NCBI RefSeq assembly: GCF_001447785.1
Contig: NW_015170278.1
Location: 1,851,144 to 1,915,143, forward strand
DNA length: 64,000 nucleotides
Source: Gekko japonicus
Taxonomy: Eukaryota
Direction: 5' to 3'
Both the position numbers and the translations under genes were made by a program. How positions within the stretch are numbered: the first letter of the stretch is position 1; every line of letters begins with the position of its first letter. A model generated the notes under the pieces. That model searched no databases and was not told the origin of the DNA. It worked only from the letters and a program-made list of their open reading frames with translations. Shown here piece after piece: positions 24,501-60,195 of the stretch.

Positions 24501-27500
24501 CTCTCTGTATATGAAAATTACATATTATATATATATGAGCTTCATCTGTAGGACCCCTTTAGGAAGTAGAGGGCCAAAACTGCGACTTGATTTATCTCCA
24601 ACTTTTAAGAATCAATGACCCGTCTGGTCAATGTCAAGATAACAGGACAGCTCTTTACCCCTGCAGCAGTGCCTACGGTTGCTCCCAGAGGCATCATGGA
24701 GGCTGCAATACCGTTTACTGGTAAGTGAGACCCATTGACTGCAATGGAACTCAGTACTTGTGACTGAGCAGCAAGGAACAGAATTAAACTATTCCCTCAT
24801 TTATTTGCTGTTTAAACCTTGCCTGGGGAATTTGAAACAGAAGACATCTGCAGGAGCCCTTAATAGAAAAAACCTGCTGGTTAATATTGGCAGAATAATG
24901 TTGCTTCTTTCCGCCCAAAATTCATACATGGAACATTTACTCAATAACAGCCTATTGTGTTTATTTGAGAACTATGTTAATTATCAGAATGCTTGCCATA
25001 AAAATGCACTCCTTGCTTCTTTCGTAGAGGGCCACTGGCATATGGTAAAGCAGTACAGCTGTTAGTCTGGCCAGAATCTTTCACATCTCTGATATCTCTA
25101 CTGGTCCTCCTGTCTAAAATACAAGCCCTTTTACCCCTCTCCTTCCTAAACTCTTCCTCGGGGATCCCAGGGCAAGCCCTGAACTAATTGGATTCAATTA
25201 GCACTCCCTCCTTTATGACACACTGAAACTGATTGCATGCTGGACCTCCAGCACTCCCTTGCCTGGTCCTGACATCTGTTTAAAGCGTTTTCCCTGAGAT
25301 TTCAGTCTTGCCTGCAAGCATTTGTGTCTCCACGTATCCATGTAATGCACAATGCAGTATCCATCCCCCGCTCCTAATGTCTGCGTGAATATCTCATCTT
25401 GCTTGTTATATGTGAATGAATATGCCAATGAACAATCCTAAGTAAATCTACTCAGAAGTAAGCCCTATTTATCCAGTGGGGCTTACTCCCAGGAAAGATG
25501 CCCTAGGATTGCAACTCTTAGCATGTGCCTAACCAAATGATGTTTAGCTTTTGAGAGAAAGGCAAATCTCCACTCAAGGGAAGCTTCAGTGGGAAAGATG
25601 GTTGTGTACTGTGAGAAGCAGTTCAAAGTTTTTTTGCGGGGTGCAAAGCACTGTCCAGTGGCCCCACCATTAAGTACGTCACTCCTTCAGGTATACATGC
25701 ATGGACATGCATACCCTCCTGGAAAAGGAAATAAAGCATGATTCTTGCATGCTCCTTTATGATCCATTGTCACTAGCAAAGCTGAAAGGAATGTGAAAGT
25801 CTCTTGCTTTTCTCCCTCCAGGTACTCTCCCTGCCTTGAATGGAAGACTGCATCAGAGGTCCCCTATAACACTGCGGGGATCTGGTGTGTGTGTGTGTGT
25901 GTGGGATAATCTCCAATTACTGATGGGAATGGATGATCCAGGTTTTTGTGGTCTGCAGTGGGTTCTCTCCCATTCCATGAATTTCAGGAGACACCTCCAT
26001 CAAGAAGGAGAGTTGGATTTATACCCTTCCCTTTATTTGGAGTCTCAGAGTGGCTTACAGTCTCCTTTCCCTTCCCCTCCCCACAACAGACACCTTGTGA
26101 GGAGGAAGAGGAGGAGGAGGAGAAGGAGATTGGATTTATACCCCATCCTTCACCACCCAAAGGAGTCTCAGAGCGGTTGGTTTATAATCTAGTCACGCGG
26201 GATCCTTGGGTGTTCCCATGTATAAATTGTTTTATATTGTGCTTTTATTGTATTTTATTGCACTTTTGTGCCTTATGGCTGTAAGCCGCCCTGAGCCCGC
26301 ATGCGGGGAGGGCGGGGTATAAATGAAATTAAATAAATAAATAAATCTCCTTTCCCCTCCCCTCCCTACAACAGACACCCTGCGAGGTAGGTGGGGCTGA
26401 GAGAGCTCTGAGATAACTGGTCTTGAGGGAACAGCTCTGAGAGAACTGTGACTGACCCAAGGTCACCCGGTGTGGCATATGCAAATAAGTTATGCTAATG
26501 TGTTGTGCCAATGAGCTCCTGCAACTCTTTTTCTACGAAATGACCCCTTAGTACACCAAACTGGCTAAAAGATATAGGCACCACCACCCATTTTTCATAG
26601 AAAACCAAGAGACTTTCTCAAACAACTTTAAGACTGTGTCTGTTATCAGCTCATCTCTGCGGTGTTCTGGACCCTAAATTCTATTCCTATTCAAATTCTA
26701 ATAATTCCTGGGCCCAGAAATGTTAACATGGGACCCAAGTGTAAATATTATCCATATTTTAAGGGTGCCTAATCCTCTTGAAATAATATATTTCATTTCC
26801 TGAAAAAATAACATAGGATTTTGCAGTTGCCACTCCTGCTGGTAACACCAGATTGGTGAGTCCTTGAGCATCTTCATGATGGAGTACCAAGGAGGAGGTG
26901 GGCAGGGAGAATTCGGGTCAAAGCCCCTTTGGCTAGAGTAGCTAGAGTAAAGGGGAGAATTTTTGCAGGAGCTTTTTCTGTCATCACGGCAGTATTAGGG
27001 CAGGTAGCTAGTTGAAATTCATATCATGTAAATTCATTCATGTAAAAGGCACTACTATTAATTGTAGCACACCTAGATCAGCCTGAAGCTGGATGAGGAC
27101 GATGGAGCAAACTGATAAGTACAACCAAGGTTTTGCATAAACGAGGCTTAAACTACCTTTTCGTTTCTGACACTTCATGAGGACAATGTTAAGATGGCAT
27201 TAGAGGATGTCATGATCTGGCCAACTCTGGACAATTGAAAGTTTCAGCTTACACAAAAAGTACTTTAAATTCCATGTCTTTAAATGGATATTTCCATTTC
27301 AACTGGCAGAATCATGTCAAAGATACATCAGAACTTTAAGACTTCCTCAAGCAAAGATGTGTGTGGGTTCTGTCATTCCAGTCCACACTAAAAAGATCCA
27401 GGCAGACTCTGTAACATTTAAGGCTGATAGGCAGGAAACTCAGCAAGGCATTAGATGATGGAACTTGTTATATATATATTTTAAAATCCTACTATTCCCC

Positions 27501-35389: not shown

Positions 35390-36152
35390 CACAAACAATG
35401 GAGGCCCAGGTAGCAGTCACTGCCAGATCAGCCTTTTACCATCTTTGGCTGATTAGACAGTTGGTTCCCTTCCTTGACNNNNNNNNNNNNNNNNNNNNNN
35501 NNNNNNNNNNNNNNNNNNNNNNNNNNNNNNNNNNNNNNNNNNNNNNNNNNNNNNNNNNNNNNNNNNNNNNNNNNNNNNNNNNNNNNNNNNNNNNNNNNNN
35601 NNNNNNNNNNNNNNNNNNNNNNNNNNNNNNNNNNNNNNNNNNNNNNNNNNNNNNNNNNNNNNNNNNNNNNNNNNNNNNNNNNNNNNNNNNNNNNNNNNNN
35701 NNNNNNNNNNNNNNNNNNNNNNNNNNNNNNNNNNNNNNNNNNNNNNNNNNNNNNNNNNNNNNNNNNNNNNNNNNNNNNNNNNNNNNNNNNNNNNNNNNNN
35801 NNNNNNNNNNNNNNNNNNNNNNNNNNNNNNNNNNNNNNNNNNNNNNNNNNNNNNNNNNNNNNNNNNNNNNNNNNNNNNNNNNNNNNNNNNNNNNNNNNNN
35901 NNNNNNNNNNNNNNNNNNNNNNNNNNNNNNNNNNNNNNNNNNNNNNNNNNNNNNNNNNNNNNNNNNNNNNNNNNNNNNNNNNNNNNNNNNNNNNNNNNNN
36001 NNNNNNNNNNNNATATTGAATTGTTTTATAATTGAACTGTTTTTAGATGATTTTATGATAAATTCAACTGTTAATTCATGCATTATATAAGTCGCCCTGA
36101 GCCTGCTCCGGCGGGGAGGGCAGGGTATAAATTGAATAAATAAATAAATAAA
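35390..36152 (+). mobile_element. L2 LINE fragment spanning an assembly gap
   Basis: MEAQVAVTARSAFYHLWLIRQLVPFLD before the gap. taagtcgccctgagcc...gggtataaat (TAAA)n tail after it. Confidence 0.7.
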
Positions 36153-36314
36153 TGTAAAAGGATTTTATGTGTGTCTTTTTATTGTAGACATATCATCTTC
36201 CATTAGCTGTCTTCTGAAATGCTGGCAGTAGCGTGCCTAGACAGTAAAATAATAACCCACGTAACCCATTTTTGTATCATGCGCTAGCTCATTGACTGCT
36301 GTATGGCCCTCTAT

Positions 36315-54754: not shown

Positions 54755-55120
54755 AGAGTTTTGCCCTCAAACCCATAGCATTGCCGCACGGCATCCCCAA
54801 TGTGATGACATCACTTCTGGGTGAAGTTATTGTGTCAGGGATGCTTCACAGCGACGTCACTGTTTGAGGGCAGGGTTTCCCCTGCTGGCCAGCTGGCTGG
54901 CAGTGGACAGAAGCCCCCAAAACTGGTTTTTGGGGCTTCTGGGGCTCCCCCAGTTTTTGGGGTTTCTGCCTGCTGCCAGCCAGCCGGCCAGCAGGGGAAA
55001 CCCTGCCCTCAAACAGTGACATCGCTGTGCAGCATCCCTGAAACAATGACTTCACCCAGAAGTGATGTCATCGTATTGGGGGTGCTGTGTGGCAATGCTA
55101 TGGCTTGAGGGTAAAACTCT
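54755..55120. repeat. Long fold-back inverted repeat (~170-bp arms) within a MITE
   Basis: Arms 54755-54926 and 54950-55120 are reverse complements with scattered mismatches, mostly transitions. Confidence 0.92.
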
Positions 55121-56394
55121 TAAAGTGCTGGACTCGAATCTGGGAGAATGAGGTTCACATCCCCACTCTGTCATGAAGCTTGTGCAGGGGTCAGTAGGAT
55201 AAAAACCTAACAAAATAAGTAAATAAAATAAATTGGTGACTTTGGGACGAGGCTGAAGTTGGTTCCCAGTTTCTTATTCATTCCTTATTTGTGACTTGAA
55301 TCCAACCAAAAGCATTGAGGATAGTTTAAAAGTTCTGAGCCCCAAAATAAGGTTTGGACCACCATAAATCATATACCCCCACATTCAGGGGACTCTGCCC
55401 TTCGAGAGGACATATGATGTTTCCTGGTCCAAAGCCCAGTTCCTGTGCCAGCTGCTTCAAAGTGGGGTGCCTTAGGAAAAATAGCAGAGGCAGACACTGG
55501 GGCCAAGCTGTACCCCAAAATAATCTTTGGACAATCCCATATCACACATCCTCACACTCCAGTTTGTAACACTGCCTGGTTACAAACACTGGTTCTGGTG
55601 CCATGAGCTTTTATTTGGAGTGCTATCCAGAAGCCTGTATAAGGAACTGAAATGGCTGCATGCCCTCTGCTATACAAGAGAAAGTTTGGACCACTGCTGC
55701 TCTCATGCATCCCTACATTCGGAGGACTCTGCCCTCCAAGGGAATCTATGCTGTTTCCTGATCCAAAGCCCAGTTCTTATGCTAATAGCTTCAATGTTGG
55801 GATCCCCAGGACAAATGCACACACGGACACTAGCTGCCCTGAGCCTGTTCGCAGGATGAGCGGGATATAAATATAATAAATAAATTTAAAAAATGTCATT
55901 CAGTTGCTGACCGAGAAGTGGCACTCCTCAGAGAGGCATCAGGGGGAGATTACAAACTGAGATTGCTGAACTGAAGTTCATTCACATGTTTATAACAATA
56001 GACCTACCAGGTCTGAATTATTTCTTATCTCACTAATGTTCAGTACGCAAGCATTTCCTCTCTGTTCTAACCAAGCGTATTACAATGTGCATTGCTTCTT
56101 TGCATCCTCCTGACCCCTTTCTCTGCAACACAATTCCCACCTTCTGACTACGATATGATGACTCAGAAGTTCCCATTTCAGTTTGTATCTGACCAGGTGA
56201 GCTTTGACTCTTGAAAGCTCAGACACACACCCCCCCCCCCGAGATTGTTGATCTTCTCTAAGGTGCTACTGGGGAGAGTCTGTGTGTGTGAAGTGCACAG
56301 TGATTGGGTAGTTAGCCCCATGTGACTTGTGCAAGTGTCCATGGGATGCTTTAGTACTTAAAGAACTTAGTAAACATGACATAAACATGACAAT

Positions 56395-56773
56395 GGCCCT
56401 GATCACATGCAGAATTTGCCACAGGATACTCACAAATGCTGGCCGGATTTTACTGATGCGATCAAACGGACACATCTGGCCAGCGTCCCGCACCCGTCAG
56501 CAACCCGTAGCAGTCAGCCAAAGAAGCGGAGTTTAAAAGTACCCGGGAAAATCCACTATCAACTGGTTGTGACAGGCTGCAGCCGGATGCTCTCCATGTG
56601 ATCGCTCCAGCGCGCTCCTCTCACGCCCCTGCTTCCTGGTTGGAGCACGCCGGAAACACTAGCCGATGGAAACAACGCCGTCGTATCTGATCGCGTTGGG
56701 GTTTGTCAAATTGTGATGGCACAAATTGCCACACCTCCCCCCCCCACATTTTCCGGCACGTGTGACCGGGACC
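56395..56773. mobile_element. Harbinger-like MITE nested in the long-TIR element
   Basis: Imperfect TIRs GGCCCTGATCACATG / CGTGTGACCGGGACC, 3-bp flanks aat/tat. Confidence 0.45.
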
Positions 56774-58304
56774 TATGATGACATTTTCAAAGCTCTGTCA
56801 GGAGCTTAGTAAATGTGCATCTTCACATATGTGGGGCTGGCTCTTTACATCATTCTGTCATTGTCTATGGTTTGTGAAAATGCCTTGGAAAACTGGGCAT
56901 AATGATCTCACTTTTGAGGGCAAAATCATAAGTGCATTCTTAGAATAGTAACCTTTGCTACAGAAAGAAGGCTGTCAAAAGACCGTTTCCATTTGGGGAA
57001 GGATAGCAAGTAAGTGACATTCAAATACCATATAGTTTAGGAAATGGCTGTATAATTTTTGGCACAAAGACAGAAGGGGACTGAGAACTAAAGGTTCAAG
57101 AAGTGGAAACAACGTGAGTCTGTAAGAAGCATGAAGATTCACATTTCTTCTCTCCAGTGTGATAAATGCAAGGATTGGTTTCCCCCAATGAACAGAGGTT
57201 ATCAGTCACAGTTAATGTTGCCCAGCTAACACCATAGCTTTGTCCAGTCTGTGAGGCCACCAAGAATACTGTACTTAGTGATTATAAATGTAACCAGGGT
57301 TAATACGTACAGAGAAAAAATAACAGCTCAAGGTGCACACCTAAATTTTGATTCAAGTAGTTTTGTGCATCCATGAACTATGGTAACATCTCATGGTAAT
57401 GACATAGAACATGAATGTGCCAGTGAATGTGGACCTGTGTTTTCTGAAAAGAAATCTATACTCAGTTTTATTGAGAAAAAATGGCAAGGTATTATTGATC
57501 CTCATGATGATCAGTTATCTGTTTTTAAGAGACATTTTAGAGACAGCAGTGGAGAGGTGGTAGTTAGAAATTGCTCGTTGCTTTTTGCCATCAAGACATC
57601 TGACTTATGGTGATCCCGTAGGGTTTTCAAGGCAAGAGACCTTTAGAGGTGGTTTGCCTTGGTGGTCTCCCATCCAGGGCCAACTGTGCTTAATTTCCAA
57701 GATCTGACGAGATCAAGCTAGGCCAGGCTATCCAGGGTGGTTAGAAATTCTACCTTGCAGCAAATGCTTTTCCACTGAGCTACCTGATTCCACAAATGCG
57801 GAATTTAGAGCTTCCAACTTTTAATATATTATTATCTTTTATTTTATTCAAATATCTATGGAAGAACAATCCTGATGTTCTGTTTTTTCCCCCAAAAGGG
57901 GAAAAACCATAAGACTTCATCCCTCCTTTCTCTGTATCCCAACAGCATAACAGATGTACAACACAAAAACCAATGATGTCTTTTCCAGATACAAAGTTGT
58001 TGGCATAACTTATAGCACAGGACAACATTTTGTTGGCTTCCAGAAATCTGGAAAGAATAGCCGCTGACATCTGTCTATAGAAAAGCTACTGCTACTATAG
58101 GAGCTGCCGTCAGGCTAGGCACTATGCAAAGAGGAGGACAGTTCTGATTGGGGACAATAAACCTACAGATATCACAGCAAACATCAATTTTGATGAATTG
58201 ATTTTGTATGTTCTATACTGTTTTGCTTGAAATTTTAGTCACATCAGTAAGGGAACATAGAAAATTGAAAATAATAAAATAAATAACTTTTCAACAAACG
58301 TACA

Positions 58305-59100
58305 GTGTCCAGATCACATGAAGTGTTGGTACCACTTTACTCTGCTCTGGTTAAACCTCACCTTGAGTATTGTGTTCAGTTTTGGGCGGCACAATTTAAG
58401 AAGGACATAGACAAGCTGGAACGTGTCCAGAGGAGAGCAACAAAGATGGTGAGGGGTCTGGAGACCAAGACCTATGAGGAAAGATTGAAGGAGCTGGGTA
58501 TGTTTAGCCTGGAGAGGAGACAACTGAGAGGTGATATGATCACCATCTTCAAGTACCTGAAGGGCTGTCATCGAGAGGATGGTACAGAGTTGTTTTCTGT
58601 TGCCCCAGAAGGTCGGACCAGAACCAACGAGTTGAAATTAAATCAGAAGAGTTTTCAGCTAAACATTAGGAAGAACTTCCTGACAATTAAAGCGGTTCCT
58701 CAGTGGAACAGGCTTCCTTGGGAGGCGGTGGGCTCTCCTTCTTCTGAGGTTTTCAAACAGAGCCTAGATGGCCATCTGACAGCAGTGCGGATTCTGTTAA
58801 TTTAGGCAGATCATGAGAGGGAGGGCAGGAAGGGCTGCCTCAGTGCTTAGTTCTTGTGGCCCTTTCTTACACACCCAGGGAAATGCTGATTGCCACTTTG
58901 GGGTCAGGAAGCAATTTTTCTCCAGGCCAGTTTGGCTAGGGATCCTGGAGGTTTTTTTGTCATCTTCTGGGCATGGAACAGTGGTCACTGGGGGTGTGGA
59001 GGGGGAGGTATTTGTGAATTTCCTGCACTGTGCAGGGGGTTGAACTAGATGACCCTGGAGGTCACTTCCAACTCTATGATTTTATGATTCTATGATTCTA
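58305..59100 (+). mobile_element. CR1 LINE 3' fragment nested in the long-TIR element
   Basis: ORF2 C-terminus [17 protein letters not shown]...WNRLP, 3'UTR and (ATTCTATG)n tail. Confidence 0.92.
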
Positions 59101-59719
59101 AGTGAAACAGAGGGTTTTGCACAGCACAATAAATAACTTTGAAATAATTTTGACTGAGAGGCTGAACCTAGGATACCTAGGGCAAGGGAAAGTAGGGATC
59201 TCAGCGGTTCTAATAGGAGATTTTGGTACCAGAGGCTGTATTTGGCCCACACATCATTCCATGCATGTTGGTGCTGGGGGCACCCCACTTTGGAGCAATT
59301 AGCACAAGAACTGGGCTTTGAACTAGGAAGCAGCATAGGTCATGGGGGCACCCCACTTTAGGGCAGTGGCACAAAAACCGGGCTTTGGACCAGGAAATAT
59401 CATATGTCTTCTTGAAGGGCGGAGTCCCCTGAAGGGTGTGTGTGGATGATTTATGGTGGTCCAAACCTTATGTTGGGGTTCAGAGCTTTTAAACCATCCT
59501 CAATGTTTTTGGTTGAATTCATGAATAAGGAACGCATAAGGAACTGGGAACCAACTTAAGCCTCCTGACCTTGGGCCAGTCACATTCTTTCAACTGAACC
59601 TACCTAGGGTTGTCTTGAGGATAAAATGTGGTGTGATGTACACCACTCTGAGGTCCTCGGAGGAAGAGTGGCATAACAATGTAGTAAATGAATAAAATAT
59701 AGATGGAGTTTTGGTGGAA

Positions 59720-60195
59720 CATAGAATAGAATCATAGAATCAGAGAGCTGGAAGGGGCCATACAGGCCATCTAGTCCAACCCCCTGCTCAATGCAGGATC
59801 AGCCGAGAGCATCCCTGACAAGTGTTTGTCCAGCCGCTGCTTAAAGACTGCCAGTGAGGAGGAGCTCACCACCTCCCTAGGCAGCTGATTCCACTGTTGC
59901 ACAACTCTTACGGTAAATAAGTTTTTCCTAATATCCAGCCGGTACCTTCCTGCCCTTAATTTAAACCCATTATTGAGAGTCCTATGCTCTACTGCCAACA
60001 GGAGCAGCTCCCTGCCCTCCTCTAAGTGACAGCTCTTCAAATACTTAAAGAGAGCAATCATGTCCCCCCTCAACCTCCTCTTCTCCAGACTAAACATTCC
60101 CAAGTCCCTCAGCCTTTCCTCATGGGGCTTGGTCTCCTCCTTTTTGAAGTGAGGCCTCCAGAACTGCAAACAATACACCAGGTGTGGCCGTGTGT
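59720..60195 (-). mobile_element. CR1 LINE 3' fragment (second family)
   Basis: RPHLVYCLQFW...LEKRRLRGDMIALFKYLK...WNQLPREVV, with catagaat tail repeats. Confidence 0.88.

What the first reader, a model, noticed from the sequence alone, without database searches (positions are those of the whole stretch)
55249..59564. ~4.3-kb long-TIR DNA transposon that splits a Squam3 SINE, with an unusually long (~11-13 bp) target duplication
Seen: 55249-55471 and 59347-59564 are diverged reverse complements of ~220 bp, beginning GAGGC and ending GCCTC. A Squam3 SINE stops at ..ggtgactttgggac on the left and resumes as ctgaccttgggccagtcac on the right. The duplicated piece is tgactttggga/tgaccttgggc, 11-13 bp depending on where the TIR end is placed. 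Inference: one insertion event younger than the SINE, later invaded by CR1, L2, a 5S-SINE and a MITE. Long TIRs plus a TSD of this size fit neither hAT (8 bp) nor Harbinger (3 bp); MULE-like elements (9-11 bp) come closest. It may be an undescribed family.
Basis: partly seen in the sequence, partly recalled or inferred. Interest (0 to 1): 0.85.

Follow-up and report, generated by a model that had tools for sequence, protein, structure and literature searches.

The report
Decayed long-TIR DNA transposon, 12-13 bp TSD
A 4.3-kb stretch bounded by 224-base inverted ends and a 12-13-base target duplication is one old, non-coding cut-and-paste transposon lodged in a lizard SINE; its shape is most like Mutator-type elements, but its family could not be tested, so it is a modest curiosity rather than a proven new kind.

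Summary
Window 55249-55471 and 59347-59564 are inverted copies (224-nt alignment, 85% identity, E about 1e-67; K2P 0.13). The bases abutting them repeat the same SINE core motif: 10 of 13 positions match, or 10 of 12 with one extra base. No shorter direct repeat exists at the junction, and random flank pairs from the window reach this score about 6 times in 10,000.

Each arm also holds roughly 165-nt subterminal tandem units, three on the left and about 1.4 on the right. These occur nowhere else in the 64 kb. The interior contains nested repeats (CR1 3' end, SINE fragments, an L2-like tail, a MITE-like piece). None of 32 stop-free pieces shows a transposase or any other Pfam domain. One decayed PHD-like finger is present but is not statistically supported.

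My best reading is one ancient insertion of a non-autonomous long-TIR class II element, structurally Mutator-like. Pack-MULE criteria in the literature accept TSDs of 9-12 bp. Penelope-like, KDZ/Zisupton, hAT and Harbinger readings fail their tests.

Family membership, copy number, TSD consistency and the empty orthologous site could not be tested. Unchecked scan notes report other foldback elements with 9- and 12-bp TSDs in this genome.

The parts
55095..55235 (+). Left flank: MIR/Squam3-type SINE head, then a 51-bp A-rich-tailed piece (55183-55233)
   Evidence: Aligns with other SINE copies in the window. The extra 51 bp are absent from the reference copies.
55236..55248 (.). Left copy of the target-site duplication (gtgactttgggac)
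   Evidence: Matches 59565-59577 at 10 of 13 positions; Monte-Carlo p about 6e-4.
55249..55471 (+). Left terminal inverted repeat, tip GAGGC
   Evidence: 224-nt alignment, 85.3% identity to 59564-59347.
55335..55831 (+). Three subterminal tandem units of about 165 nt (55335-55498, about 55499-55674 diverged, 55675-55831). Each holds a short internal inverted motif (GGTTTGGACCA / TGGTCCAAAGCC).
   Evidence: BLAST 73% between units 1 and 3; nhmmer E 9e-22 and 2e-6; the motifs occur only in the arms.
55832..55900 (+). Nested 5'-truncated SINE 3' end with an A-rich tail
   Evidence: 74-78% identity to 36094-36155 and 26284-26352.
56186..56224 (+). L2-like/SINE tail motif (nested fragment)
   Evidence: 77-82% identity to 50545-50507 and 47683-47645.
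56397..56778 (.). MITE-like piece with short inverted GATCACATG motifs; boundaries uncertain
   Evidence: Inverted repeats found; no other copy in the window.
57110..57260 (+). Decayed PHD-like finger remnant (two frameshifts, two stops); origin unknown
   Evidence: Translation; best PDB hit is the PHF2 PHD at E 0.5; Atlas top ten are all PHD, best score 0.91; Pfam silent.
57582..57736 (-). Nested SINE-like repeat; 5S origin not confirmed
   Evidence: 65-79% identity to three other loci in the window; no Rfam 5S or tRNA hit.
58300..59100 (+). Nested CR1 3' part with a 166-aa ORF remnant and an 8-nt tail repeat
   Evidence: 83-92% identity to four other CR1 copies; tail array 59073-59100; ORF.
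59268..59341 (-). Partial inner subterminal unit of the right arm
   Evidence: 80-84% identity to 55409-55471 and 55746-55815; nhmmer E 8e-15.
59347..59564 (-). Right terminal inverted repeat, tip GCCTC
59565..59577 (.). Right copy of the target-site duplication (ctgaccttgggcc)
59578..59705 (+). Right flank: remainder of the SINE (core, body, A-rich tail)
   Evidence: Aligns with the SINE copies.

Best explanation
This is one ancient insertion of a non-autonomous class II (cut-and-paste) transposon. Its ends are TIRs of about 224 bp, followed inward by tandem units of about 165 nt. These units are the likely arrays of binding sites for a transposase supplied in trans. The transposase cut the target, the MIR-like core of a Squam3-type SINE, with a 12-13-nt stagger, and gap repair duplicated that stretch. 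The two arms have since diverged by about 13%, and retroelements (CR1, SINEs) sit inside. By structure (long TIRs, subterminal repeats, long TSD, G-started tips) it is most like Mutator-type (MULE/foldback) elements. Shown directly: the TIRs, the duplication, the subterminal units, the lack of coding capacity and the nested repeats. Inferred: the transposase class, trans-mobilisation, and that the nested repeats arrived after insertion.
For: The TIR pair is 224 nt at 85% identity, E about 1e-67, with tips aligned to the base. The junction duplication matches 10/13 or 10/12, no shorter repeat is possible, and random expectation is about 6e-4. Its 15-23% mismatch is in line with the arms' 12% raw difference and K2P of 0.13, as expected if both date from one event. 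The motif occurs once in intact SINE copies. Subterminal units are found only inside the element. There is no poly(A) or microsatellite at either tip and no hammerhead, which argues against retrotransposition. MULEs are defined by TIRs that are often hundreds of bp long and TSDs of 8-11 bp (PMC6446971). Pack-MULE criteria accept 9-12 bp, and a MULE with a 12-bp TSD is reported (PMC4178011).
Against: Only one copy was seen, so the TSD length of the family is unknown, and 13 bp would exceed every published MULE range. No Mutator-type or other transposase remnant appears in any of 32 stop-free pieces of 40 aa or more. Two comparative studies report MULEs as absent or doubtful in vertebrates (PMC6446971; PMC4350176). 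TIR sequence alone cannot assign a superfamily.
Confidence: 0.55

Rival explanations
1. It is a DNA transposon of a different or undescribed superfamily whose transposase regularly makes 12-13-bp staggered cuts. It would be neither MULE, hAT, Harbinger nor KDZ.
For: A TSD of 12-13 bp lies at or beyond the top of every eukaryotic cut-and-paste range found in the literature read here. No Mutator transposase remnant was found. An unchecked scan note reports another foldback element with a 12-bp TSD in this genome.
Against: There is a single copy and no protein evidence of any kind. TSD length varies within MULE families.
Confidence: 0.2
2. It is a Penelope-like or other retroelement inserted as a head-to-head inverted pair. 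The two outer ends would both be 3' ends, and the variable-length TSD would come from target-primed reverse transcription.
For: From general knowledge, Penelope-like elements often carry inverted 5'-truncated partners and TSDs of variable length. Unchecked scan notes mention hammerhead-bearing foldbacks and head-to-head LTR-like units in this genome.
Against: No hammerhead ribozyme appears in either arm, even at E up to 10 on short stretches. The only RT remnant is an ordinary CR1 3' end that matches other CR1 copies, and no GIY-YIG remnant was found. The arms are made of tandem units rather than a coding 3' region.
Confidence: 0.08
3. It is not one event. Either two separate copies of a TIR-bearing repeat inserted in opposite orientation, or two separate SINE fragments happen to flank an inverted duplication.
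For: The left SINE is irregular: only 16 nt of SINE core abut the left TIR, preceded by an A-rich tail. Squam3 copies with internal tandem duplications are known in geckos (PMC10702118). The SINE core is a common motif in this genome.
Against: Both arms end at the same base of the same motif, and the two SINE pieces are complementary with exactly 12-13 nt of overlap. No shorter TSD exists for either arm alone. No solitary arm occurs elsewhere in the 64 kb.
Confidence: 0.07

Closest known systems
Mutator-like elements (MULEs), including non-autonomous and Pack-MULE and foldback forms
   Same: TIRs hundreds of bp long, a long TSD (8-11 bp by definition; 9-12 bp in Pack-MULE search criteria), an interior unrelated to any transposase, and tips that start with G.
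   Different: The TSD is 12-13 bp, at or above the upper limit. There is no Mutator DDE or SWIM remnant. The host is a squamate, whereas MULEs are reported as absent or doubtful in vertebrates (PMC6446971, PMC4350176).
Rehavkus (MULE-related group, Repbase; arthropods and annelids)
   Same: TIRs up to 400 bp, tandem repeats near an end, and a PHD finger in the encoded protein (PMC6446971). This element has long TIRs, subterminal tandem units and a decayed PHD-like remnant.
   Different: Rehavkus makes 9-bp TSDs. No transposase is present here. The PHD-like remnant is statistically unsupported and may be unrelated cargo. The repeats here are 165-nt units in both arms, not a minisatellite before the 3' TIR.
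Zisupton / KDZ transposons
   Different: Their TSDs are 8 bp (Zisupton, Dileera) or 7 bp (Kyakuja) (PMC12730594). No KDZ domain was found. Among vertebrates they are known only from teleosts (PMC4350176).
Penelope-like elements with inverted partner copies
   Same: Inverted termini and a TSD of variable, sometimes long, size.
   Different: No hammerhead ribozyme, no RT/GIY-YIG remnant, and arms built from tandem non-coding units.

Membership tests
Mutator-like elements (MULE) | Long terminal inverted repeats (tens to hundreds of bp) | tested here: met
   224-nt arms at 85% identity.
Mutator-like elements (MULE) | TSD of 8-11 bp (9-12 bp in Pack-MULE criteria) | tested here: inconclusive
   The TSD is 12 bp plus one extra base, or 13 bp with 3 mismatches. 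Twelve fits the wider criterion; 13 fits none.
Mutator-like elements (MULE) | Mutator-type DDE transposase, or TIRs shared with an autonomous partner that has one | tested here: not met
   No Pfam domain in 32 stop-free pieces of 40 aa or more. An autonomous partner could not be sought.
Mutator-like elements (MULE) | Several genomic copies with the same termini and independent TSDs of constant length | not testable with these tools
   No copy in the window.
Rehavkus | 9-bp TSD | tested here: not met
   Flank lengths of 6-12 at offset 0 give 4 matches or fewer; the 9-mer gives 2.
Rehavkus | Transposase with a PHD finger | tested here: inconclusive
   A PHD-like remnant lies at 57110-57260. Pfam is silent, and no transposase lies beside it.
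hAT | 8-bp TSD (5-8), short TIRs, hAT dimerisation/BED domains | tested here: not met
   No 8-bp repeat at the junction. Only a zf-BED hit at E 0.06-0.1, below cut-off.
PIF/Harbinger | 3-bp TSD, short TIRs | tested here: not met
   The junction bases differ (gac versus ctg).
Zisupton/KDZ | 7-8-bp TSD and a KDZ transposase | tested here: not met
   TSD lengths from PMC12730594.
Penelope-like elements | Hammerhead ribozyme in the terminal repeat; RT plus GIY-YIG ORF | tested here: not met
   No Rfam hammerhead at E up to 10 in either arm. No RT except a nested CR1.
Squam3 (Ther1/MIR-derived) SINE as the target | Similarity to the Squam3 consensus | not testable with these tools
The flanks align with other MIR-core SINE copies of the window. 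The family is described in PMC10702118.

The most novel reading that the evidence does not exclude
The element is a relic of a MULE/Rehavkus-related or wholly undescribed lineage of cut-and-paste transposons. This lineage would have been active in squamates and would regularly make 12-13-bp target duplications, longer than any described eukaryotic DDE superfamily. Its transposase would have carried a PHD finger. It would be the same agent behind the other long-TSD foldback elements noted, unchecked, elsewhere in this genome.
Probability: 0.15. Interest if true: 0.6.

Novelty: new member of a known kind. Interest (0 to 1): 0.3.

Why it matters
If other copies confirm a constant 12-13-bp TSD and a Mutator-type or unknown transposase, this would document a class of DNA transposon that comparative surveys list as absent or doubtful in amniotes. 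It would also extend the known range of target-cut stagger. As it stands, it is a clean, datable example of nested transposon stratigraphy inside a SINE-rich stretch: a useful annotation, not a discovery.

Tried and rejected
- **Sequencing runs:** There is therefore no empty-site test and no genome-wide copies.
- **Spurious TIR ORF:** a protein search with it, meant to pull other copies, found no candidates.
- **Metagenome scans:** two exact-pattern scans with conserved TIR 24- and 27-mers gave 0 hits.
- **Scan findings by sequence:** blank.
- **Interior domains:** Pfam on all 32 stop-free interior pieces of 40 aa or more gave no domain above noise.
- **PHD-like piece:** phmmer against 1.8 billion proteins gave three hits, all internally repetitive proteins with summed weak stretches and no PHD, so they are spurious. 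PDB searches of two pieces gave nothing significant.
- **Hammerhead/PLE idea:** rejected.
- **5S and tRNA origin of the nested SINE:** not confirmed.
- **Arm structure:** the arm folded as a single strand gave z = 0, so no special structure.
- **KDZ/Zisupton remnant idea:** no support.
- **Gene context:** the SEMA3G intron assignment was not checked.
Full report
**Observation**

The stretch was read directly. Inverted-repeat detection and BLAST of each arm against the whole window show that 55249-55471 and 59347-59564 are reverse complements over a 224-nt alignment at 85.3% identity (E about 1e-67). An alignment of the two arms read inward shows they begin at the same base, GAGGCT(G/T)AAGTTGGTTCCCAG, and that the flanking bases no longer pair. 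The tips are therefore defined to the nucleotide. The K2P distance between the arms is 0.13 (18 transitions, 8 transversions over 217 aligned sites). Neither BLAST nor a profile built from both arms (nhmmer) finds another copy in the 64 kb.

**Target duplication**

The left flank ends ...ttggtgactttgggac and the right flank starts ctgaccttgggccagtcac. Comparing the last k bases on the left with the first k on the right gives:
- 10 of 13 matches at k = 13;
- 10 of 12 matches if one extra c is allowed on the right;
- 4 matches or fewer for k = 6-12.

No shorter duplication can be hidden there. Under a generous scoring scheme (lengths 9-15, offsets 0-1), 122 of 200,000 random flank pairs from the window reach the observed score.

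The duplicated motif is the MIR-like core of a SINE, and intact copies in the window carry it once. The right flank continues through the SINE body to its A-rich tail. The mismatch level of the duplication (15-23%) is in line with the arms' 12% raw difference, as expected if both date from one event.

The left side is not a clean SINE half. After the SINE head (about 55115-55182) comes a 51-bp piece ending in an A-rich tail (55183-55233). Only then come the 16 nt of SINE core that abut the TIR. There are two possible explanations: a short fragment was inserted into the SINE, or an internally deleted SINE is followed by a 5'-truncated second copy. Irregular Squam3 copies are documented in geckos (PMC10702118). 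Either way, the duplication at the junction stands.

**Anatomy of the arms**

Inward of an outer stretch of about 90 nt, each arm is built from tandem units of about 165 nt:
- Left arm: three units at 55335-55498, about 55499-55674 (diverged; nhmmer E 2e-6) and 55675-55831.
- Right arm: one full unit plus a partial unit at 59268-59341.

Ten-mers such as GTTTGGACCA, TCCAAAGCCC and AAAGTGGGGTGCC recur in the arms and almost nowhere else in the window. Each unit holds a short internal inverted motif. As a single strand, the arm folds no better than shuffled controls (z = 0).

**Interior**

| Feature | Coordinates | Evidence |
|---|---|---|
| CR1 3' part with a 166-aa ORF remnant and an 8-nt tail array | 58300-59100 | Four other copies at 83-92% |
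| SINE-like repeat | 57582-57736 | Three other copies |
| SINE 3' fragment | 55832-55900 | |
| L2-like tail motif | 56186-56224 | |
| MITE-like piece, boundaries uncertain | about 56397-56778 | |

Rfam and ARAGORN do not confirm a 5S or tRNA origin for the SINE-like repeat. The remaining interior of about 2 kb has no stop-free stretch above 101 aa. All 32 pieces of 40 aa or more were scanned against Pfam and none gives a transposase, RT or other domain above noise. With only about 6-7% change per arm since insertion, a gene that was intact at insertion should still be obvious. The element was therefore non-autonomous when it inserted.

**The PHD-like remnant**

At 57110-57260 (+ strand) the translation gives the spacing of a BPTF/PHF2-type PHD finger. 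The pattern is C-x-C, about 12 residues, CDKCKDWF, then P where H is expected, two residues, N where C is expected, about 16 residues, then CPVC. It contains two frameshifts and two stops, each one substitution away from Cys or Tyr.

The statistical support is weak:
- The best PDB match is the PHF2 PHD at E 0.5.
- The ten nearest Atlas clusters are all PHD fingers, with a best score of 0.91, a level that 4-10% of shuffled sequences also reach.
- Pfam is silent.
- phmmer against 1.8 billion proteins returns only three internally repetitive, unrelated proteins.

I take it as probably a real but long-dead PHD finger of unknown origin. It may be transposon-encoded or captured.

**Mechanism**

Exact inverted tips plus a flanking direct duplication is the signature of a transposase-mediated cut-and-paste insertion with a staggered target cut, here of 12-13 nt. 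Two observations argue against retrotransposition: there is no poly(A) or microsatellite at either tip, and no hammerhead ribozyme in either arm, even at E up to 10 on short stretches. The subterminal unit arrays are the likely binding sites for a transposase supplied in trans; this step is inferred.

**Comparison with known families**

- **MULEs** are defined by TIRs commonly hundreds of bp long and TSDs of 8-11 bp (PMC6446971). Pack-MULE search criteria accept 9-12 bp with up to 3 mismatches, and a rice MULE with an imperfect 12-bp TSD is reported (PMC4178011). A 12-bp reading therefore lies at the edge of the known range, and a 13-bp reading lies just outside it.
- **Rehavkus** combines long TIRs, a tandem array and a PHD finger, but makes 9-bp TSDs and is known from arthropods and annelids.
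- **KDZ elements** make TSDs of 7-8 bp (PMC12730594).
- **hAT and Harbinger** TSDs do not fit.
- **Vertebrate surveys** report MULEs as absent or doubtful in vertebrates and Zisupton only in teleosts (PMC6446971; PMC4350176).

Structurally the element works like a non-autonomous MULE or foldback element. Membership is not established, because the transposase criterion is unmet and the copy criterion is untestable here.

**What could not be done**

Metagenome scans, a protein handle for other TIR copies and the scan's own sequence index all found nothing.

Word searches of the scan's notes list other foldback-type elements in this genome with 9-bp and 12-bp TSDs, and hammerhead-bearing foldbacks. 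These are unchecked first-reader notes and I used them only as leads.

**Verdict**

This is a real, well-bounded, ancient, non-autonomous long-TIR DNA transposon with a 12-13-bp TSD. It is most likely Mutator-like, and its family is undetermined. Interest is modest unless genome-wide copies show a constant long TSD or an unusual transposase.

Noticed in passing
window 54755-55120: A palindromic MITE-like hairpin with arms of about 170 nt (92% over the inner 123 nt, 87% over the outer 60 nt) and a 23-nt loop. It lies directly against the head of the left SINE. It draws several sub-threshold miRNA-family hits in Rfam.
   Followed up: partly
window 57110-57260 (+): A decayed PHD-like zinc finger with BPTF/PHF2-type spacing, two frameshifts and two stops. 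Atlas and PDB lean towards PHD, but nothing is significant. It is not known whether it is transposon-encoded or captured.
   Followed up: partly
window 59159-59167: The 9-mer GAGGCTGAA, identical to the TIR tip, occurs inside the element just after the CR1 tail. Chance expectation is about 0.03. It could be the trace of another terminus or a coincidence.
   Followed up: no
window 55183-55233: A 51-bp piece with an A-rich tail sits between the SINE head and the SINE core that abuts the left TIR. The target SINE is therefore irregular or composite.
   Followed up: partly
window 57582-57736 (-): A SINE-like repeat with three other copies in the window. By eye it resembles 5S rRNA, but Rfam gives no 5S or tRNA hit even at E 10.
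   Followed up: partly
window 59021-59093 and 59726-59798: The tail region of the CR1 nested in the element is an inverted match (81-84%) to a CR1-like fragment just outside the element beyond the right SINE. These are two CR1 insertions in opposite orientation.
   Followed up: no
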